A DNA stretch of 64,000 nt from Lepidodermella squamata (GCA_047495785.1 JBLDXI010000016.1:1025862-1089861); one strand, 5' to 3'; numbered from the stretch's first letter, positions 19,031 to 40,308 are shown. A program made the numbers and translations. The notes: a model not told the origin generated them from the sequence alone.

Positions 19031-20335
19031 TCAGTTACTAACAGTGCTTTGCATCTTCGATAAATCGTCAAATTTCACGTAATCACTAACAGTTTTAGGC
19101 AAGCCCAGCAACTCGATGGCTCGATTCCGCTCGTTGAGGCCCTTCGGCAGCTGATTGAGCAAAACACGCCGCGACAGCCTTTGCAGCGATAACGGAACTT
19201 TCGAGTCGAATTCTACGCCAACTAGCCCGTACTCTTCTAGGATCCGCCTTAAAAACACAACCAACCGCGGCCTGTCGTCGATCGGCGTTCGGATTAGCAC
19301 TAAATGATGCTGACTTGTCGCTCTGATTCGGGCGGGTAGGCGAAACCCGGCCTGGATAAGGAGTAGCAGGCCGTTCCTTAGAACCAGCTCGAACTCGTCG
19401 AATTTGCCAGATGATAGCAATTTTTTCAGCAGGGTGAATAATGCAGCTTCTAACTGGTAACGCCTCGACAAACTCGCCAGAGCTTGGCTGGAAAACATTT
19501 CCAACAACCTGCGGTATAAATCGGGCGATTGATAGGCCAGCGATGAGATACTCGCGATTGAGACTGAATCTTCAATCGAATCCCGATCTGAAACTAAACC
19601 AGCTTTCACTTCTTCCTGCCGTCTATTCAGGAATAGCTTCATCATAACAACGTAATCGTCGATTGGGTGATTTGTCATCAGAGCTTGGCTGATTGATGAC
19701 GCGGTGGCGACGATCGGCCTAGGGTGGGGCCGTCTACCAGGCGGGGGGTCGTTCAAAACCACGGTTAACGCGCCTTTTTTCAAGCAAATTTTAACGCATT
19801 CAGGATAGCCGTTGTAGACAGCTTCGTACAACAGCGCCTGTAGGTAGCAGCGCGGGATGATTGCTGAATTTTTTCGAATTAAAACCGAAAAATTGCGATG
19901 GTCACCGGAGGAAACCGAACACCACAATTGCATAGCTAGCCGGTGGTCGAAAACTTTTTTATGAAAAACTTTCGCAACATCTTTCAACCGAAATTTCGTT
20001 AGTTCGGCGAGAAATTTTTCGTGGAGTTCTTTCGATTGCGATCGGCTGATTTCTCGCAGGCCGATATCACGATCTTGCCGCTGCGAATTCGAGCAGTAGC
20101 CGGTTAAACACCGCGGGTAGAACATGATAAATTGCGCCTGGTCCGGGTCGAATTGTGACGTTAGCCTACTGAACAGGTACCAGTGCGATTGAAGGGTGGA
20201 ACTCGTTGTTGTATCAGGGGGAAGTTTTAGCCTAACTTTGCACCATGTCGCGTTCGCTAGCGCCAGGTAGTCGTCGTGGAAGTTGTCGGTGTTAAGCGGG
20301 CAATTTGGCGGGCAGATAAGGCGGCCTCGTTGCAT
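19031..20335 (-). CDS. SOCS-box protein with degenerate ankyrin-like repeat (ASB-like), intronless
   Basis: C-terminal VPLSLQRLSRRVL (BC-box)...IELLGLPKTVSDYV (cullin box); LLYEAVYNGYPECVKICLKKGA ankyrin-like. Confidence 0.75.
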   Translation of the reverse strand: MQRGRLICPPNCPLNTDNFHDDYLALANATWCKVRLKLPPDTTTSSTLQSHWYLFSRLTSQFDPDQAQFIMFYPRCLTGYCSNSQRQDRDIGLREISRSQSKELHEKFLAELTKFRLKDVAKVFHKKVFDHRLAMQLWCSVSSGDHRNFSVLIRKNSAIIPRCYLQALLYEAVYNGYPECVKICLKKGALTVVLNDPPPGRRPHPRPIVATASSISQALMTNHPIDDYVVMMKLFLNRRQEEVKAGLVSDRDSIEDSVSIASISSLAYQSPDLYRRLLEMFSSQALASLSRRYQLEAALFTLLKKLLSSGKFDEFELVLRNGLLLLIQAGFRLPARIRATSQHHLVLIRTPIDDRPRLVVFLRRILEEYGLVGVEFDSKVPLSLQRLSRRVLLNQLPKGLNERNRAIELLGLPKTVSDYVKFDDLSKMQSTVSN

Positions 20336-30866: not shown

Positions 30867-33800
30867 ATGGCGAAGCAATATTTTGCTTTAATAGTAATTT
30901 CAGGAATAGCCGGCAATGTGTTAGTTCGATGTGATCAAGATTCTAGTACGCAAACAAAAGCACTGATGGAAGAATTGCAGAAGGAGTACGTCTACAACTG
31001 GTGCCCGGTCGTGATGTCTCGAAGCGTCCCGAGCGAAACGGTGGCCAGGAATAACTTCACCCAGGCACTTCGTGTCAAAACAGCCGCTTACATTTTCCGC
31101 TTCATTCAAATCAACGACGTCGAGCAGCGAATGTCTCTTTTCCTATACTTCACCTTTGAATGGTCGTTTCCCTGCCCAGTCTACGATTGCTCCAAAGTAG
31201 TTCCCGATTCGCCGTTGTGCAAATTGCCGAAAGATCGGGTTCAAAGTTTATACTTTCTCCTAACGCCTCGAGATGTCTGGCACCCCTACCTGGCCCATCT
31301 CAACGCTTATGAAACGACTCGGCCGTTGGAAAATGGAGCAGATGGAGACATCGTGTTCATCTTCCCATTCATGGCATCTGGGCCTCAAGCTTACATCGGT
31401 TACACCCGGCGAATCGACACGTCTTGCTCGTCATTCTCATTCAAGCACTTTCCATTCGACACTTTGACTTGCGAGATGAAGTTTGAACCGGAAGAGAGTA
31501 GTGACTTCCTTTGGTACGATGTCGTTTTCTATGGGACAGATGCGTCTCTAAGTACGAATCTGATAAGCGATACCGATGTTTGGGAGTTGGCGTATCCTAA
31601 TAATTTAAGTCGGACATTCACCGGGGAGAGTTTGAACGTTTCCGAGTCGACAGGCGTGTTTTCGCGAATGGTTTTAACGAGTCGATTTAGGCGCAAGTAC
31701 AACTACTACGTCGCGAGCATGATGATTCCGTCTTACGCGACCTTCTTCTTACAAATCACGTGCCTATTCTTACCGCCGAAATTACCAGACAGGTAATTTT
31801 TACATAAATTCGTAAAATAAATTCGTAAAATAAATTCGTAAATTAACGAATCCCAATCTTAATCAGTTGACCTATGTCCTATATTTGCGCAGCAATAATT
31901 TTTTTATTTCGCACCTTTTTATGGAAATTTAACTAATTTGTTAATGTAACCTACCGGGAGATTTCATTCTTTATCCAAGAATTTTCTGAAGAATTCATAT
32001 TTTACCGGAAACCTTGGAAAACTCTAAAGGTAACTTGCTTGGGGTTCGTTAATTGTCAGTATTTTATCATATGTTTGACCAAATTTCTCCGGATTTGTGA
32101 TTAATCTACCTTTTGCCGCAACCAAATTCAAGGTGAGCGGAACCAAATTTGTGGGTTTTATAGTGGTATTCTGTTTATTATTGGTGGTCTGCGTTACGGA
32201 TATTTACAGGAGCGTTGCCATATTACCAATATTTCTGTAATTTTTCGGTAGTACGCAAATTTCTTCTCAAGATTCTCAACAAATATACGGTCATGCGTAT
32301 CGAATATTGCGAGAAATACCTCTGTTATTGCTATAAATTAGCTCTCAATGAGTTGAAAGGATTATTATAAGGTGATTTCAACGCGTAAACACGGCCCTTA
32401 TAGTTTGCCACGAACAAGGACTTGGATAATATTTATTTTCCACTGTAAAAACTTTTTAATTAGCTAATCTTGAATAATAATAGAATTGTAATGTTTCAAA
32501 TTATCGCTCGAAGTTAGAGGTTTCAAGCACTCATCACTCCATTACTTGAAGTTCTTGAAACTACATGTTTACTTCTGTACAATAGCTCTGCAAGTTGGGC
32601 AACTGTCATTCTCTCTCAGCCAGCGGTTAATGCAGGCCATATGATAAGCTAGAAAAAACGTCAATATAGGGATGAGGTGAAGACATTTGAATTAGAAGTT
32701 ACCATGTCCACAAATCAAGCGTCTCGAACTGCAACCGAGTTTTACGATGTCCAAGTAACAAATCGGGCATTGAGAAGTCTCCCCATTCATAGTTTCGTCT
32801 TTAAGGAAGAAAAACAGATAGAAATTAGAAAAATTGCATCAACACCTTACCATTCCCTCCAGTATGCAAGAGTTCCTTCGAAGCAGTGTAAAGCTTCTCG
32901 GCCAATAAAAAGAAGTACCGCTCGGATTTATCAGATCGGGTGAAAATTTCAGCTTCGGTTTGAACGGCAAACTTGCGCAAAGCCACGAGGTCACTGTAAC
33001 CACCGCTCCTCACCCTTAATTCATGCATAAATTTATCGATAGCAGCCTGCCTAGCTTCAGTTCCGAATTCGCTCTGCCATGTTGAGGCATTAGCTTGAAT
33101 GGGAATAACGGTGCCATAGCCTGCCGGGATATTATCACTCGTTGTTTTCCGCAAAACTTTCGAGTCGAAAACAGGCTTCGACAAGTGACTCAGCATCCGA
33201 ACTTCCTTACATACAGGACACTCCTCGTCCTTGCACGACTGCCAATGTATACCTATTTGCCGCGTAGACAAGCAGCTTTTGTCTAAAATCGAATCTAAAA
33301 TCTTAGCATCCGAAATTAATTCCATAATTTAAACTCACATGTGCAAGATTTATCATGCCTGCAACCTCTCAGGTGGCTTATCACTTCTTTCATTCGTTGA
33401 CAATAAGCGACTCCGCAGTTCGGAAAAGTCGGGTTTGTTGCAGTACCAGCAACACTTGCTGCTATCGACTTTGCCATAGCATCTCGTTTCTCACACTTAT
33501 GAGCATGCAAAATCAAGATCAATTGATTTTGAATCCCTATTCTTTTCTCCTCGCTTAGCCCTTGATTAGTTTTATTCTGAAACCACAGAAAAATGTTGAA
33601 AATAGCACTAATTCAGAGGAAATTACCGGCGTAACGGTTGAGCTAGAAGAGACTGGCAGAGAAGAGATGGTTGAGCTTTCAAAAGAATCGCTTTTCTTGT
33701 CACAACCTTAATTGAAAAAAATAATAGTTCGATGATTCATCATTAAATTCATTACCTGAGCATTCACCGGAGATCATCTCAAAAGCTTCTTTTACTTGAT

Positions 33801-36592
33801 CGGCTAAAAAGTCGTTTGAAAGAATTTGCTGAGCTGATGGCCTCAATGTAGGGTCGTCATTGAGCATTGATTGAATTAAATTTCGAAGATTTGAACTGTA
33901 AATCTCGGGTATGGACCTATTTTTCCATCTGAATAGTGAGAAATATGAATGTTTCAGAGATGATTCATCTTTAAAATCAAACCTTTTTACAGCCATTTCG
34001 TAAGTTTCCCCGAGTTCTACTGTGAAAGCAGGTGATTTTAAGCTAGCCAACTCGAATAACGTTATTCCCAGCGACCAGATATCGGATTGTTTAGAGAAGC
34101 TCTGCTTCCTCCATAGCTCTGGGGCGACGTAAACTGCTTCCTCTTTTTCGAGATTAGGAAGTGACTCCAAGCTAGTAAAATGAAAAAAAACTATTGCCAT
34201 CATTCCTAAGATTGAAATTTGATTCTCCAAACCATTTCCGTTTTGTTAGCCCAAAGTCTCCGAGCTTCAATTTCCTACCAACAAGGAAAATATTCTGAAA
34301 AAGAAACATTACCGATTTCGCATCAAATATATAATAGGATAAGATCAATCCATACCAATGGCCTTATATCCCTATGAACGATTTCCAGATCATGAAGTGA
34401 TCGAATGGCTATCGTAAGCTGAGCCAACCATAAGCAAATGAGATTTTCAGGGAAAGGTTGTTTCGATTGAGCAATCAGCGATGAAAAAGCCGAACCTGAG
34501 GAAATGAATTGTTTTATATAAATTGTGTTCGCTTCTTCGTCACTTAGGTACCTATGCCGTAGGTTTCAGTGGTAACAAAAGTATAATCTTTCATATTTGC
34601 AACGTCGAGAACTCGAAACAGGAATGGAACATGGGTGGATTTCAGCCTTTCGTACTGGATATGACACATTTTGCGAAGAATATAACTAAGTTTATTTATA
34701 TTTACCTCTCTTATCGTTGCCTCTTGTTCGTTCGCTGCCCTAGTGGAAATGTAAGCTTTCTTGGTCGGATTTGTGTCATGAAATTCATGAGCGTTTTCGG
34801 AGAGCTGTTCAAAATTAACATTAGAGATTTTTATTCATTTCTTATTTTAATGTTACTGGATTTCCTTACATAATCTTTATTGCCATATCGATATGCGAAA
34901 GAGCCTGAAACATTTATTTGTTAAAAAAAAGGATCGACGGCTTGTGAAAAATTCTAACCAGTTTGAGGCAGAAACAGTAGAGACATTTTATGTTTTGATT
35001 TTAACCAAATCAGCTTATTGAATCCTGAAAATATTATGACTGCAGAGGACGAAGTAGTATAGAAGATTTGGTTACTTATATATTCTTTCGACACTACAAA
35101 TGATTCATTAGGTAATTTCATTCATTAGGTACAGTTTATTCTTCCGTGGAAAAGTGGCTTATCATTTATTTATTTCAGATATTAGCAATTTATTATTTAA
35201 GACTTGTCACTCCCGGTATAAAAGCAAATTTTAAGAAAGCTGACAATTCTTTCTACTTAACTTGACTTAACTTAACTTAAGTTGAGTCACGTTAACTGAT
35301 GTATCGTTCAATATTATTCATACTACAAACGCCGCTTATGCCTAATTGTTTTTACTAAATTTTTAATGTCGCACCCCATTTTTGCAACTGAAATACGGGG
35401 CCTATATCGGCACTGGTTAGTCGAACCTGTTTTAGCTTGGTCGAACCTAGCCGAAGCTGTTTTGGCCTGTTAGAACCTTTCTGTACCGGATAGTCGAACC
35501 TAATAATCGAAGATACTTTTGTTTGGCCTGGTCGAACCTGGGCGAACGTCTTGAGATGTGCGGTCAAACCTTTTCAGGCGTGGTTGGCCGAACTATTTCC
35601 TCACATCGGAGTCCTTAAAAATGTTCGGTCAACTTCGTGTCTAACGCATTTTTAGGATTTGTTTTACAACGTCGATATTTTTGAATCCTGGCCGAACTAT
35701 GTCGAACAAAAATGCCGGCTTCGGTTCGATCAACGATTTAGACGGCTATATCTCAAACTCTCGAAAATCCTTGATTTAGGTGTTCACAGTTCAATTAGAT
35801 CAACTCGGGTTTTTTAATTTTCTTGTCGCGTATATGAAATTTTTCGCGATTTCGAAGCGAAATCTTCGCATGTTCCGCGACTTGCAGGGAAATGAGCCAG
35901 CCATATCTTGTAGAGAATCAAACAGGCTACACGCCGATATGACCATTACCTTCCTGGTCCGTTTGTGCAGGAGACTAGCGTGCGAAGTTTGCCAAAATAT
36001 CTAAATTGCCAAAAGTTCAAATTTTTTCCTTGCGGTGGTTTTCCACCGAAAGAGTACTGAAAAAGTACCGCAGGATTCAGCTTATAGATACAGGATTGTA
36101 AAATTAATTATAATAAAATCATAGAATTATGAATTTTCCAAGATTTTTCTAGCCATGGTTGTAACCCTACAAATTTTTTCAAAGATGATTTCTTCGTTTA
36201 TATTCAGAATTTTGAAGTTTTTGATATTCGGTTCTTTTTTCACTGTTAATATGTGGAAATTTTTCAGGCCATCTTTTGCGATGACAGCAGTTTTAGCGAA
36301 TTCGGTTCTGCTTTCGCTGGTTTTCTCCAGCATTCCACCAACTTCAGAAACTGTCTACTTCGTAACGATGGTCATCATCAAGTTTGTCGCTGGTCTAGTG
36401 ATAACAATGTACACTTTGCTGACGGTGCCTCTAGCTGGCTGGTTGAAAGGTGGCGAACTGATTTCGATCGGCAGGTGGCATCTCACGCGAATTCGATTGG
36501 CGGATATCGTTCTAGGAATTGTGATTTTCATATTAGGACTAACCGCTGATATTTTCTTCTTTTCAAGACTGAGGAATGAAACTACTTACTAA
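30867..36592 (+). CDS. divergent pentameric (Cys-loop) ligand-gated ion channel A; exons 30867-31792, 36268-36592
   Basis: signal peptide, INDVEQ, WHP, C..F..FPFDT.TC loop, RFRRK pre-M1, four TM helices after phase-2 splice AG|G; paralog 38742-40308 has the same junction. Confidence 0.85.
32569..35121 (-). CDS. nested multi-exon gene: NEK-like kinase + TAZ1 zinc finger + KIX + RING-H2 (start approximate)
   Basis: spliced in frame: VHRDIRPLN, KLGDFG, YVAPE, SDIWSLG; QLILILHAHKC...HWQSC...CPVC; YFFLLAEKLYTASKEL; CPIC..CGH.YH..C..W..CPTC stop. Confidence 0.8.
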
Positions 36593-36787: not shown

Positions 36788-37299
36788 AAAACTGTCGATT
36801 GAAACTTGGTCATTTTCAGCAGTGATAACAGGAATCTGATATGGTTTTCAAGTGTTTTGTTTTTAATTGGCACGGATGTTCGGTTTCGATTTGGCTTTTA
36901 TAGCCGCGAAGCGCGCGTATCATGACGTAACACACGCCCAGTTTCCCAGCCCGCGTGTCTCCCACCAGCTGTCACACACGTGTTCAGGAAACTAAAGGAT
37001 TGGAAAAAATTGGATTTGTTTATCTGTCCTAATTAATCTCAGATGTCAAGCTGGATTCACTAATGAGCGTTTCATCGCGCGACCAATTCAGGGCTTGACG
37101 GTGCCGCTACTGCACGCGACAATCGCAGCCCTGTTCACAACATCAATAATGTCGCGTGTCGCGTGGGTCGCTACTACTATTCACAAACTAGTGCTAATTA
37201 GCCTGCGACCTGTAATTGTTAAATTCGATTAAATTGAAGAAAATAAAAAAATGTTGGCAACAAAACTAAAATTATATGGGGGACCACCATATTTCGGTT
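36788..37299 (+). repeat. 512-bp near-identical direct duplication of 37965-38476 (promoter plus first codons of the peptide gene)
   Basis: nearly base-for-base match at offset 1177. Confidence 0.9.
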
Positions 37300-37756: not shown

Positions 37757-37990
37757 TCAGCATTCCCAGCCATCCTCGCCGCAACCACCATAACTACTGC
37801 ATAGCCTGAGGTTTTCACTTACGGGTGTCCAGGCTTTCCTAATCACAACTCGTCGACCACTGTTGGTCTCGCAGCAGCAAGTGACGCTCCACGTCCCGCA
37901 GCATCCGGCGCTTACCGAACCAACTTCGAACGAGACAATGAGGCAGGCAACTGCAACGAGCACAAAAACTGTCGATTGAAACTTGGTCAT
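37757..37990 (-). CDS. small secreted cysteine-rich peptide (77 aa precursor)
   Basis: signal MTKFQSTVFVLVAVACLIVSFEVGSVSA then 49-aa mature peptide with 8 Cys (CC, CCC, C, C, C). Confidence 0.75.
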   Translation of the reverse strand: MTKFQSTVFVLVAVACLIVSFEVGSVSAGCCGTWSVTCCCETNSGRRVVIRKAWTPVSENLRLCSSYGGCGEDGWEC

Positions 37991-38741
37991 TTTCAGCAGT
38001 GATAACAGGAATCTGATATGGTTTTCAAGTGTTTTGTTTTTAATTGGCACGGATGTTCGGTTTCGATTTGGCTTTTATAGCCGCGAAGCGCGCGTATCAT
38101 GACGTAACACACGCCCAGTTTCCCAGCCCGCGTGTCTCCCACCAGCTGTCACACACGTGTTCAGGAAACAAAAGGATTGGAAAAAATTGGATTTGTTTAT
38201 CTGTCCTAATTAATCTCAGATGTCAAGCTGGATTCACTAATGAGCGTTTCATCGCGCGACCAATTCAGGGCTTGACGGTGCCGCTACTGCACGCGACAAT
38301 CGCAGCCCTGTTCACAACATCAATAATGTCGCGTGTCGCGTGGGTCGCTACTACTATTCACAAACTAGTGCTAATTAGCCTGCGACCTGTAATTGTTAAA
38401 TTCGATTAAATTGAAGAAAATAAAAAAATGTTGGCAACAAAACTAAAATTATATGGGGGACCACCATATTTCGGTTAACCAACTGCACTGCTGGATCTGC
38501 TGTATTACTTCGAATCTACTTCAAACGTAGTATTATTTTCTTAATTTCCGATATCCATCAAATTATTTTAACGTCAACTTTACATTGTTTTATTACTTGA
38601 CCTCAACTTTCGATCATCAGCCTTGGCAAAATGGAGTTAAGTGAATTCCGTGCGATTACCGTTAATTATGGTATTAAATAAACATTTTCAAAGTAAGAAG
38701 CAAATATATAATCAACACTCTGATAATTCGAGCGAGATATT

Positions 38742-40308
38742 TCAATTCCTAGGTTCATTTCTCAATCTACAAAAGTAAACAACATCAGTTATTAGACCCA
38801 GTATAAGTATGGCTATTCCTAGCACGATATCCGCAAATCGAATTCGGGTGAGATGCCACGTGCCGATCGAAATCAGTTGGCCGCCTTTCAACCAGCCGGC
38901 TAGAGGCACCGTCAGCAGTGTGTACATTGTTATGACGAGACCAGCGACGAACTTGATAATGACCATTGTTACGAAGTAGACAGTTTCCGAAGTTGGTGGA
39001 ATGCTGGAGAAAACCAGCGAAAGCAGAACCGAATTCGCTAAAACTGCAGTCATCGCGAATGATGGTCTGAAAAGTTGAAATTACAACTTTTTAAAGATTT
39101 TATAAAGATTCAAGAAGTGAAGAAAGAATCCATAAATGGAGATAATTCGATAATATAACGAATCTTGGCTAATTAGCATCTTGAGTCAGGAAAAATATTC
39201 AAAAGAGGTATTTGATTGATATGATCAGGAGGCTGAAATAATTTCGAAATAGAAATTAATTATTTTGTAGCTGGAAATTTTCGTCGGTTTGTGACGAATA
39301 AATTTAATTATATTAATTTTGCTGAAAACATTTCACATTTGCCTTTAAAATTATTGGCAGTACTTTCTTAACATTTTACCTGTCTGGAAATTCAGGTGGT
39401 AAGAATAGGCACGTGATTTGTAAGAAGAAGGTGGCATAAGACGGAATCATCATACTCGCGACGTAGTAGTTGTATTTACGCCTGAATCGACTCGTTAACA
39501 CCATTCGCGAAAACACGCCTGTCGACTCGGAAGCATTCAGACTCTCCCCCGTAAAAGTCCGACCTAAATCGTCAGGATACGCCAGTTCCCAAACATCGGT
39601 ATCGCTTATCAGATTCGTACTTAGAGACGCATCCGTCCCATAAAAAACAACATCATACCAAAGGAAGTCACTACTCTCCTCGGGTTCAAACTTCATTTCG
39701 CAAGTCAACGTGTCGAATGGAAAGTGTTTAAATGAAAATGACGAGCAAGACGTGTCGATTCGCCGGGTGTAACCGATGTAAGCCTGAGGCCCAGAAGCCA
39801 TGAATGGGAAGATGAATACGATATCTCCATCTGCTCCATTTTCCAACGGCCGAGTCGTTTCATAAGCGTTGAGATGGGCCAAGTAGGGGTGCCAGACGTC
39901 TCGAGGCGTTAGGAGAAAGTATAAACTTTGAACCCGGTCTTTCGGTAATTTGCACAACGGCGAATCTGGTACGATTTTGTTACAATCGTAGACTGGACAA
40001 GGAAACGCCCATTCAAAGGTGAAGTATAGGAAAAGGGACATTCGCTGCTCGACGTCGTTGATCTGAATGAAGCGGAAAATGTAAGCGGCTGTTTTGACAC
40101 GAAGTGCCTGGGTGAAGTTATTCCTGGCCACCGTTTCGCTCGGGACGCTTCGAGACATCACGACCGGGCACCATTTGTAGACGTACTCCTTCTGCAATTC
40201 CTCCATCAACGCTTTTGTTTGTTTACTTGAATCAAAATCGCATCGAACTAAAATATTCCAGGTTAATCCTGAAATAAGTATTATTAATATTGTAAAATAT
40301 TGCTTCAT
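38742..40308 (-). CDS. divergent pentameric ligand-gated ion channel B; exons 40308-39380, 39066-38742
   Basis: near-identical protein to channel A, 313-nt intron. Confidence 0.87.

What the first reader, a model, noticed from the sequence alone, without database searches (positions are those of the whole stretch)
32569..35121. Chimeric kinase-TAZ1-KIX-RING-H2 gene that the ORF track misses
Seen: joining minus-strand exons at GT-AG introns gives one frame. It runs kinase C-lobe (HRDIRPLN, DFG, APE) -> Ser-rich linker (33628-33706) -> TAZ finger (QNQLILILHAHKC...RQIGIHWQSC...CPVC) -> KIX (YFFLLAEKLYTASKEL) -> RING-H2 (CPIC..CGH.YH..C..W..CPTC) -> stop at 32569. Known: TAZ1 followed by KIX is the N-terminal transcription-factor-docking part of CBP/p300 (KIX has YYHLLAEKIYKIQKEL). 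Inference: the CBP docking module has been grafted between a NEK-like kinase and an E3 ligase, possibly to capture CBP-binding transcription factors for phosphorylation or ubiquitination. I know of no protein with this architecture. No Gly-loop/VAIK is visible in the N-lobe, so it may be a pseudokinase.
Basis: partly seen in the sequence, partly recalled or inferred. Interest (0 to 1): 0.88.

Follow-up and report, generated by a model that had tools for sequence, protein, structure and literature searches.

The report
Kinase-like CBP-mimic RING ubiquitin ligase gene
A 13-exon animal gene really does join a degenerate NEK-like kinase domain, copies of the two transcription-factor docking domains of the coactivator CBP/p300 (TAZ1 and KIX) and a RING ubiquitin-ligase finger, a design described in no paper I could find, but whether this copy is expressed and what it does are untested.

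Summary
On the minus strand, 13 exons (35121 to 32569) joined by 12 GT-AG introns of 49-65 nt give one 629-aa frame. Pfam run on single exons finds Pkinase, zf-TAZ, KIX/KIX_2 and RING-H2. The TAZ finger matches TAZ1 of CBP/p300, not TAZ2. An AlphaFold model of exon 11 matches CBP KIX structures first.

The fusion is not a mis-join.
- A metagenome contig from another animal (L004) carries the same four-domain gene at 23-44% identity.
- Its four introns sit at the window gene's positions and phases.
- Its kinase C-lobe and TAZ lie in one uninterrupted ORF.

TAZ1-KIX-RING also occurs without a kinase in other animal contigs. All family members form one 100/100 clade apart from CBP-type TAZ-KIX.

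Most likely it is a RING E3 ligase that picks targets by their activation domains, with a largely non-catalytic kinase-like domain as regulator or scaffold. That function is inferred.

No RNA data exist for this copy.

The scan had already noted paralogs of both kinds on other DNA of this genome. I found no paper describing the architecture.

The parts
34959..35121 (-). Exon 1, start codon at 35121-35119 (aa 1-54); N-terminal extension and a possible beta1-beta3 region of the kinase-like domain.
   Evidence: TAA and TGA stand in frame directly upstream. The N-terminus (MK..N.SFV.S) matches the start of the L004 homolog. No Pfam or PDB match.
34870..34904 (-). Exon 2 (aa 55-66); carries a 'GSF' remnant of the glycine-rich loop.
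   Evidence: GT-AG junctions and frame. A GSF motif is also present in L004 exon a.
34706..34804 (-). Exon 3 (aa 67-99); region of beta3 and helix C. Ser stands where the L004 alignment places the VAIK lysine.
   Evidence: The intron after this exon (..E|Y..) has the same position and phase as in L004. No Pfam or PDB kinase match on its own.
34552..34654 (-). Exon 4 (aa 100-133); end of the N-lobe and the hinge.
   Evidence: aligns with L004 exon b.
34356..34495 (-). Exon 5 (aa 134-180); helix E and the catalytic loop HRDIRPL.
   Evidence: Pkinase 21.6 bits, profile positions 89-126. The intron after it is shared with L004.
34233..34294 (-). Exon 6 (aa 181-200); NIFL and DFG.
33983..34171 (-). 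Exon 7 (aa 201-263); APE and helix F.
   Evidence: Pkinase 60.5 bits over exons 7 and 8. The best PDB match is NEK2, E 2.7e-10.
33756..33928 (-). Exon 8 (aa 264-321); end of the kinase fold (..LSNDFL..), then Met315, which may be the old start of the TAZ-KIX-RING unit.
   Evidence: Alignment of the start of stand-alone P0043 to Met315 onward scores 29, reached by 31 of 1000 shuffles, so it is only suggestive.
33627..33706 (-). Exon 9 (aa 322-348); Ser-rich linker.
   Evidence: No ATG, and an in-frame TAA directly upstream of its acceptor, so it needs an upstream exon. A DNA contig of run X1 spans 33680-34139 without differences, linking exon 9 to the kinase exons.
33339..33576 (-). Exon 10 (aa 349-427); TAZ1 helix 1 and the first two zinc sites, with a 13-residue loop insertion.
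   Evidence: zf-TAZ 35.6 bits. CBP/p300 TAZ1 chains E about 2e-9, against TAZ2 about 1e-3.
32851..33282 (-). Exon 11 (aa 428-571); third zinc site of TAZ1, a disordered linker, and KIX.
   Evidence: zf-TAZ 18.6 bits, KIX_2 29.9, KIX 18.5. The AF2 KIX part has pLDDT 86-96. Foldseek's top 7 hits are CBP/p300 KIX, target TM 0.71-0.78. Both flanking introns are shared with L004.
32703..32798 (-). Exon 12 (aa 572-603); first half of the RING-H2 (C582 C585 C601 H603).
   Evidence: 48% identical to the L004 RING.
32569..32648 (-). Exon 13 (aa 604-629 plus stop); second half of the RING-H2 (H606 C609 C620 C623).
   Evidence: zf-rbx1 32.6 bits and zf-RING_2 28.9 bits, both above their cut-offs.
32432..32437 (-). 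AATAAA, a candidate poly(A) signal about 130 nt after the stop codon.
   Evidence: Read from the sequence; not tested.

Best explanation
This is a real single gene of a small invertebrate. Earlier notes of this scan suggest the gastrotrich Lepidodermella squamata; I did not verify that.

It encodes a 629-aa protein with four parts in order:
- a NEK-like kinase domain with a degenerate N-lobe;
- a Ser-rich linker;
- a TAZ1 and a KIX domain of CBP/p300 type;
- a C-terminal RING-H2.

It belongs to a lineage-restricted family of TAZ1-KIX-RING proteins, some of which carry the kinase-like domain at the N-terminus.

Inferred mechanism:
- TAZ1 and KIX bind the short amphipathic activation domains of transcription factors, as they do in CBP.
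- The RING-H2 recruits a ubiquitin-charged E2, so the bound activator (or a partner) is ubiquitinated.
- The kinase-like domain acts mainly as a regulatory or docking scaffold, not as an enzyme.

Shown: the gene structure, the domain identities, conservation of the fusion, and the single origin of the family.

Inferred: ligase activity, the targets, and the role of the kinase-like domain.

The confidence of 0.6 is for the whole statement. Taken separately, I put the single fused gene at about 0.85 and the activation-domain-directed ligase function at about 0.45.
For: Gene model:
- 13 exons, 12 GT-AG introns of 49-65 nt, one frame.

Domains:
- Pfam hits on single exons.
- TAZ1 rather than TAZ2.
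- All 12 TAZ and 8 RING zinc ligands are present.
- KIX fold: AF2 pLDDT 86-96, and the top Foldseek hits are all CBP/p300 KIX.
- KIX helix 3 keeps the Y....LLAEK.Y...KEL pattern of a fish p300-like KIX in alignment A2.

The fusion is real:
- Exons 9 and 10 have no ATG before the first TAZ zinc ligands, and a stop precedes the exon 9 acceptor.
- L004, a contig of different composition (34% GC), has the same kinase-TAZ-KIX-RING order.
- In L004 the kinase C-lobe (Pkinase E 1.3e-4) and TAZ (E 3.6e-3) lie in one uninterrupted 256-aa ORF.
- All four L004 introns share position and phase with window introns.
- Identity to L004 is 31% in the kinase part, about the same as in TAZ (35%), and compares with KIX 23% and RING 44%. 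The kinase-like part is therefore maintained and is not a decaying relic.

Family:
- Stand-alone TAZ-KIX-RING ORFs include P0002, P0003/P0043, P0013/P0049 and P0059.
- The family is a 100/100 clade apart from CBP-type TAZ-KIX.

Non-catalytic kinase:
- Exons 1-4 match no kinase profile or structure.
- The Gly loop is reduced to 'GSF'.
- L004 has HKN in place of HRD.
Against: - There is no transcript evidence for this copy. The only public run with the stretch is DNA contigs.
- That run holds a variant contig with a 1-nt insertion after 33051, inside exon 11. One allele or a near-copy may therefore be frameshifted.
- The window copy keeps HRD, the catalytic Asn, DFG and APE, and exon 1 has a Lys in a NEK2-like 'LIWLK' context (the resemblance to NEK2 is from my memory). 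Residual kinase activity cannot be excluded.
- No binding or ubiquitination has been shown for any member of the family.
- The KIX match to the Pfam KIX model is below its cut-off (18.5 against 27 bits); only KIX_2 passes.
Confidence: 0.6

Rival explanations
1. Two neighbouring genes, a kinase gene and a TAZ-KIX-RING gene, wrongly joined by my model. One version would be an operon resolved by spliced-leader trans-splicing, which earlier notes report for this genome.
For: - Stand-alone TAZ-KIX-RING genes exist elsewhere.
- Retaining intron 8 gives a kinase-only product that stops at about 33701, and exon 10 begins with AATAAA.
- A good acceptor-like site (tttttag) lies about 30 nt upstream of Met315 in exon 8.
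- Met315 onward weakly resembles the start of P0043.
Against: - The kinase frame runs without a stop into the TAZ part.
- Exons 9 and 10 contain no ATG before the TAZ ligands H372/C376.
- In L004 the kinase C-lobe and TAZ are in one uninterrupted ORF with no internal Met at the junction.
- A TAZ-KIX-RING-only isoform starting at Met315 would be an extra product of the same gene, not a separate gene.
Confidence: 0.08
2. A real fusion locus, but this copy is a dispensable or dying paralog (an unexpressed or polymorphic pseudogene) in a fast-evolving gene family.
For: - No RNA run holds it.
- A variant contig has a +1 insertion in exon 11.
- Depth over the TAZ and KIX exons is 3-6 times that over the kinase exons, which suggests near-identical copies elsewhere.
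- The neighbourhood is full of lineage-specific genes.
Against: - The 629-codon frame is intact over 13 exons.
- All 12 splice sites are canonical.
- All 20 zinc ligands and the HRD, DFG and APE motifs are kept.
- The variant contig is only about 130 nt long with 5 differences, so it may come from a paralog.
Confidence: 0.15
3. A competitive decoy and not a degrader. The TAZ1-KIX part titrates activators away from CBP (or the protein modifies CBP partners with non-degradative ubiquitin), and the kinase is active and phosphorylates the bound activator.
For: - TAZ1 and KIX are CBP-like in sequence and fold.
- The window copy keeps HRD, Asn, DFG and APE.
- Small TAZ-KIX proteins without any ligase domain exist in rotifers and a wasp.
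Against: - The RING-H2 is the best conserved part of the family (44% to L004, invariant ligands in A1), which points to ligase function.
- L004 has lost the catalytic Asp.
- The N-lobe matches no kinase model.
Confidence: 0.15

Closest known systems
CBP/p300 N-terminal TAZ1-KIX module
   Same: Same two domains in the same order. TAZ1 chains of CBP/p300 are the best PDB sequence matches, and CBP/p300 KIX structures are the best fold matches. All HCCC zinc sites are kept.
   Different: No bromodomain, HAT, ZZ, TAZ2 or IBiD. There is a 13-residue insertion in the first TAZ loop. The family forms its own clade apart from CBP-type TAZ-KIX. It ends in a canonical RING-H2 and starts with a kinase-like domain.
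Unannotated stand-alone TAZ1-KIX-RING-H2 ORFs in metagenome contigs of animals (P0002, P0003/P0043, P0013/P0049, P0059), and paralogs noted earlier in this genome
   Same: Same TAZ1 (with the long loop), KIX and RING-H2; 28-37% identity over about 290 aa; same clade.
   Different: They have no kinase-like domain, and those found are single intronless ORFs with their own start codon.
L004 gene (ENA ERZ23486787, scaffold_31601)
   Same: Full kinase-like, TAZ1, KIX, RING order; four shared intron positions and phases; homologous start.
   Different: Only 5 exons. HRD is replaced by HKN and APE is lost, so it is a clear pseudokinase. Identity to the window gene is 23-44% depending on the domain.
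Plant BTB-and-TAZ (BT) proteins, substrate adaptors of CUL3 ligases (PMC11101318, PMC8774732)
   Same: A TAZ finger placed in a ubiquitin-ligase context as the protein-binding module.
   Different: BTB adaptor and not a RING; no KIX; no kinase; plant lineage; independent origin.
Fish 'p300-like' TAZ-KIXx3-SOCS-box protein (XP_029933398.1, P0009)
   Same: CBP-type TAZ and KIX fused to an E3-ligase recruiting element.
   Different: SOCS box (Cullin-5 adaptor) and not a RING. It groups with CBP-type TAZ-KIX, not with this family. Uncharacterised.
NEK kinases, and KEG-type kinase-RING ligases of plants (KEG is from my own knowledge)
   Same: C-lobe closest to NEK2, with an HRDI..N-IFL type catalytic loop. 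KEG also joins a kinase domain and a RING in a ligase that targets a transcription factor.
   Different: The N-lobe is unrecognisable to profiles. There are no NEK C-terminal coiled coils. The domain order and partner domains differ from KEG.

Membership tests
Protein kinase superfamily (Pfam Pkinase) | Recognisable kinase fold over both lobes | tested here: inconclusive
   The C-lobe is clear: 60.5 bits plus 21.6 bits, profile positions 89-263. Exons 1-4, which should form the N-lobe, match no Pfam family and no PDB kinase.
Protein kinase superfamily (Pfam Pkinase) | Catalytic residues: Gly-rich loop, VAIK Lys, helix-C Glu, HRD Asp, catalytic Asn, DFG Asp | tested here: inconclusive
   HRD174, N181, DFG193 and APE217 are present. 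The Gly loop is reduced to 'TGSFA'. Ser stands at the Lys position in the alignment with L004, though a Lys exists in exon 1 ('LIWLK'). L004 has HKN for HRD. No structural model of the spliced domain could be made.
NEK kinase family | Closest similarity to NEK catalytic domains | tested here: inconclusive
   NEK2 is the best PDB match (E 2.7e-10), but PLK1 and STK24/MST score nearly as well (1e-8). No kinase phylogeny was possible.
TAZ zinc finger, TAZ1 type | Three HCCC zinc sites; closer to TAZ1 than to TAZ2 | tested here: met
   zf-TAZ 35.6 plus 18.6 bits. All 12 ligands are present. TAZ1 chains score E about 2e-9 against TAZ2 chains about 1e-3.
KIX domain | Three-helix KIX fold with the conserved helix-3 motif | tested here: met
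   KIX_2 29.9 bits, above its 25.6 cut-off; KIX 18.5, below its 27 cut-off. AF2 pLDDT is 86-96, and the top 7 Foldseek hits are CBP/p300 KIX with target TM 0.71-0.78 and rmsd 2.1-3.4 A. W, R, E and Y are invariant in A2.
KIX domain | Binding of activation domains (pKID/c-Myb site, MLL site) | not testable with these tools
   In the window, Tyr and Lys stand at the positions of CBP Tyr658 and Lys662. The mapping goes through the fish p300-like KIX in A2, and the residue roles come from my own knowledge.
RING-H2 E3 ligases | C3H2C3 ligand pattern with canonical spacing | tested here: met
   Pattern C-x2-C-x15-C-x-H-x2-H-x2-C-x10-C-x2-C. zf-rbx1 32.6 and zf-RING_2 28.9 bits, both above cut-off, from exon 13 alone.
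RING-H2 E3 ligases | E2-dependent ubiquitin transfer | not testable with these tools
   Needs an in vitro ubiquitination assay.
CBP/p300 coactivators | Bromodomain, HAT (KAT11), ZZ and TAZ2 after TAZ1-KIX | tested here: not met
   The protein ends 60 residues after KIX in a RING-H2. No such domains were found in the exons or elsewhere in the window. It falls in a separate clade from CBP-type sequences.
TAZ1-KIX-RING family (unnamed, this report) | TAZ1 with a long first loop, KIX, C-terminal RING-H2; monophyly | tested here: met
   28-37% identity over about 290 aa to P0043, P0059, P0042 and P0049. The clade has 100/100 support.

The most novel reading that the evidence does not exclude
The family may be a set of 'integrated decoy' ligases.
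- Copies of the CBP surfaces that viruses, transposon proteins or other hijackers must bind (TAZ and KIX) are wired to a RING, and in some members to a pseudokinase sensor.
- Anything that grabs the coactivator mimic would then be ubiquitinated.
- This would be an immune logic known from plant NLR integrated decoys, here in an animal E3 ligase.

Observations that fit but do not show it:
- The family has expanded into many copies in this genome (the copy count comes from earlier notes).
- Members have diverged to about 30% identity.
Probability: 0.12. Interest if true: 0.9.

Novelty: new variant of a known kind. Interest (0 to 1): 0.62.

Why it matters
RING ligases usually find substrates through dedicated degron-binding domains. 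Here the recognition part is the pair of domains that CBP/p300 uses to read transcriptional activation domains. If the protein works as its parts suggest, it is a natural ligase that selects transcription factors by their activation domains. That would couple activator strength directly to turnover, and it resembles engineered degraders built on coactivator domains.

The family also shows that the CBP N-terminus can be detached and reused as a portable module: with a RING, with a SOCS box in a fish, and alone in rotifers. The conserved pseudokinase partner offers a handle on how such a ligase might be regulated.

All members found so far are unannotated, so the family is open for first characterisation.

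Tried and rejected
- RNA evidence: the look-up of sequencing runs gave one run, X1. Laying it showed genomic contigs with introns and no joints, so expression could not be tested.
- Full-length searches: the spliced protein has no reference, so I did not paste it into any tool. All database work used single exons or homologs.
- The search for homologous proteins was of little use here. With P0043 it found only near copies and unrelated RING proteins. With the L004 fused ORF it found only itself. With the kinase C-lobe ORF it found nothing.
- JGI metagenome scan: 5 loci, only TAZ or TAZ-KIX matches, no kinase and no RING.
- ESM Atlas with P0043: no usable hit.
- Internal duplication of the N-lobe (exon 1 against exons 2-3): not significant, 96 of 500 shuffles reach the score. 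Rejected.
- Paralogs inside the window: none.
- Kinase upstream of the stand-alone genes in L001, L002, L003, L010, L011 and L012: none found.
- PDB searches with N-lobe exons 1, 3 and 4: no kinase.
- Literature: two full-text searches for the domain combination returned only CBP/p300 reviews. The L. squamata genome paper mentions neither KIX nor TAZ.

Full report
**Observation.** I read 32300-36200 on the minus strand and translated all three frames.
- Thirteen exons from the ATG at 35121 to the TAA ending at 32569 join into one frame of 1890 nt, 629 aa.
- All 12 introns begin GT and end AG and are 49-65 nt long. Most have T-rich ..ttcag or ..tttag acceptors.
- All but introns 3 and 7 would break the frame if retained.
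- TAA and TGA stand in frame directly before the ATG. An AATAAA lies about 130 nt after the stop.

**Domains.** The spliced protein has no reference, so I scanned single exons.
- Pfam:
  - Pkinase: 60.5 bits on exons 7-8 and 21.6 bits on exon 5.
  - zf-TAZ: 35.6 bits on exon 10 and 18.6 bits on exon 11.
  - KIX_2: 29.9 bits, above its cut-off.
  - KIX: 18.5 bits, below its cut-off. Both KIX hits are on exon 11.
  - zf-rbx1: 32.6 bits and zf-RING_2 28.9 bits on exon 13, both above their cut-offs.
- Against PDB sequences, exon 10 matches the TAZ1 domains of CBP and p300 (E about 2e-9) far better than TAZ2 (about 1e-3). It carries a 13-residue insertion in the first loop.
- All 12 HCCC ligands of TAZ and the eight C3H2C3 ligands of the RING are present.
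- An AlphaFold model of exon 11, built on a 15-row alignment (A2), gives pLDDT 86-96 for the three KIX helices.
- Foldseek's first seven PDB matches to that model are all CBP/p300 KIX structures (target TM 0.71-0.78, rmsd 2.1-3.4 A). The E-values are weak, about 0.08, as expected for an 80-residue helical domain.
- The kinase C-lobe is closest to NEK2 (E 2.7e-10), with PLK1 and STK24 close behind.

**Is it one gene?** Three lines of evidence say yes.
- *Start codons.* Exon 9 and exon 10 contain no ATG before the first TAZ zinc ligands, and a TAA sits right before the exon 9 acceptor. The TAZ-KIX-RING part therefore cannot start on its own downstream of exon 8.
- *Physical linkage.* A DNA contig of run X1 spans 33680-34139 with no differences, tying exon 9 to the kinase exons. 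This run may not be independent of the assembly.
- *A distant homolog.* This is the decisive evidence.
  - A HMMER search of 1.84 billion cluster representatives with exon 11 found a small set of relatives.
  - One of them, P0007/P0048, lies on a 3.9-kb metagenome contig, L004 (34% GC against about 39% here).
  - tblastn of my model against L004 aligns kinase, TAZ, KIX and RING in order.
  - The ORF at L004 1507-2277 contains, without interruption, the kinase C-lobe (Pkinase E 1.3e-4) and the TAZ finger (E 3.6e-3).
  - I built a 5-exon model for L004 (575 aa). All four of its introns coincide in position and phase with window introns 3, 5, 10 and 11.
  - The two proteins start with a homologous Met (MK..N.SFV.S).
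  - Identity between the two is 31% in the kinase part, 35% in TAZ, 23% in KIX and 44% in RING. The kinase-like domain is therefore conserved about as well as the rest.

**The family.**
- Pfam scans of the other hits show stand-alone TAZ-KIX-RING-H2 proteins of 305-320 aa: P0002, P0003/P0043, P0013/P0049 and P0059.
- They sit on contigs with animal genes, Cys-loop channel fragments and a fibrinogen/PAN gene. They are single intronless ORFs and have no kinase upstream.
- Only intronless copies could surface as full ORFs in metagenome gene calls, so this is partly an ascertainment effect.
- A maximum-likelihood tree of the TAZ-KIX region puts the window gene, L004 and all stand-alone members in one clade (100/100). 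That clade is apart from CBP proper and from other short TAZ-KIX proteins: rotifer, wasp, and a fish TAZ-KIXx3-SOCS-box protein.
- Within the clade the order is unresolved. Either the kinase-like domain is ancestral and was lost, or it was gained once. One origin of the fusion is not excluded.
- The start of stand-alone P0043 weakly resembles the window sequence from Met315, at the end of exon 8 (score reached by 31 of 1000 shuffles). This hints at an old start codon there and at a possible TAZ-KIX-RING-only isoform, but it is only suggestive.

**Kinase or pseudokinase?**
- The window copy keeps HRD (as HRDIRPLN, with Arg for the catalytic-loop Lys), the Asn, DFG and APE.
- Exons 1-4 match no kinase profile or structure, and the Gly-rich loop is reduced to 'GSF'.
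- In the alignment with L004, the VAIK lysine position holds Ser (window) and Pro (L004).
- Exon 1 has a Lys in a 'LIWLK' context that resembles the beta3 strand of NEK2. That resemblance is from my memory of NEK2 and is not tested. It would leave about 48 residues between beta3 and helix C.
- L004 has HKN for HRD and has lost APE, so at least that member is catalytically dead.
- My estimate is about 60% that the window domain is non-catalytic. A model of the spliced domain would settle it.

**Expression and integrity.**
- No RNA run holds the stretch. Run X1 is genomic.
- In X1, depth over the TAZ and KIX exons is 160-300, against a flat 50 over the kinase exons.
- Three contigs match up to the exon 9 acceptor (33709) and then diverge. 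This suggests near-identical TAZ exons elsewhere in the genome.
- One contig of about 130 nt carries four substitutions and a +1 insertion after 33051, inside exon 11. It could be a frameshifted allele or a paralog fragment.

**Earlier notes of this scan.**
- They list both stand-alone TAZ-KIX-RING genes and pseudokinase-TAZ1-KIX-RING genes on other pieces of the same genome, one of them called expressed.
- Other notes propose the gastrotrich Lepidodermella squamata with spliced-leader trans-splicing.
- I could not read those loci and treat these notes as leads. The window GC (about 41%) is compatible with the 43% reported for that genome (PMC11660948). I did not verify the species.

**Mechanism (inferred).**
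- TAZ1 and KIX are the CBP surfaces that bind activation domains. A RING-H2 recruits an E2 charged with ubiquitin.
- The simplest reading is a ligase that ubiquitinates activators, or whatever binds the mimic, with the kinase-like domain as regulator or extra docking site.
- Rivals are a mis-joined gene pair (unlikely), a dying paralog, and a competitive decoy with an active kinase.
- A more speculative reading is an immune-type integrated decoy.

**Comparison and novelty.**
- Closest known systems:
  - the CBP/p300 N-terminus;
  - plant BTB-TAZ adaptors of CUL3 ligases (PMC11101318, PMC8774732);
  - an uncharacterised fish TAZ-KIX-SOCS-box protein;
  - kinase-plus-RING ligases such as plant KEG (own knowledge).
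- Two full-text searches found no description of TAZ1-KIX fused to a RING or a kinase. No annotated NCBI or UniProt protein with that architecture appeared among the hits.
- I class it as a new variant of a known kind: a RING E3 with a new recognition module and a pseudokinase partner.

Noticed in passing
window 36788-37087 and 37965-38264: An exact 300-nt direct repeat with 1177-nt spacing lies upstream of the gene on the other side of the spacer. Identical small ORFs recur in both copies.
   Followed up: partly
window 35381-35527 and 35822-35968: DNA contigs of run X1 pile up here (summed depth 566 and 1323, against about 50 nearby). The 1-kb spacer upstream of the start codon therefore holds fragments of high-copy repeats. 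Many short 'ggttcgac'-like motifs are visible in 35380-35620.
   Followed up: no
window 32992-33121 (exon 11): A variant contig in run X1 has four substitutions and one extra base after 33051. If it is an allele of this gene, it shifts the frame in KIX helix 1.
   Followed up: no
window 33709 (exon 9 acceptor): Three X1 contigs match the TAZ side up to 33709 and then continue with a different AT-rich intron-like sequence. Depth over the TAZ and KIX exons is 3-6 times that over the kinase exons. Near-identical TAZ-KIX exons probably exist elsewhere in the genome.
   Followed up: no
window 30867-31796 (+) and 39376-40308 (-): Two paralogous ORFs of about 310 aa, with weak Neur_chan_LBD matches, flank the gene. 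The stand-alone homolog on L001 is also flanked by Cys-loop channel fragments, which may be a trace of conserved neighbourhood.
   Followed up: partly
window 19031-20335 (-): A 434-aa ORF has a weak C-terminal SOCS-box match (E 8e-4, below cut-off). It may be another lineage-specific ubiquitin-ligase adaptor candidate in the same window.
   Followed up: no
P0009 (XP_029933398.1, Myripristis murdjan): A fish protein annotated 'p300-like' has one TAZ, three KIX domains and a C-terminal SOCS box. This would be an independent fusion of CBP docking domains to an E3-recruiting element in a vertebrate.
   Followed up: partly
P0001 (XP_067942658.1, Watersipora subatra) and the P0006 cluster (Rotaria sordida): A bryozoan protein has three TAZ fingers, and a multi-copy set of about 250-aa TAZ-KIX-only proteins occurs in a bdelloid rotifer. 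Detached CBP N-terminal modules recur in several small invertebrates.
   Followed up: no
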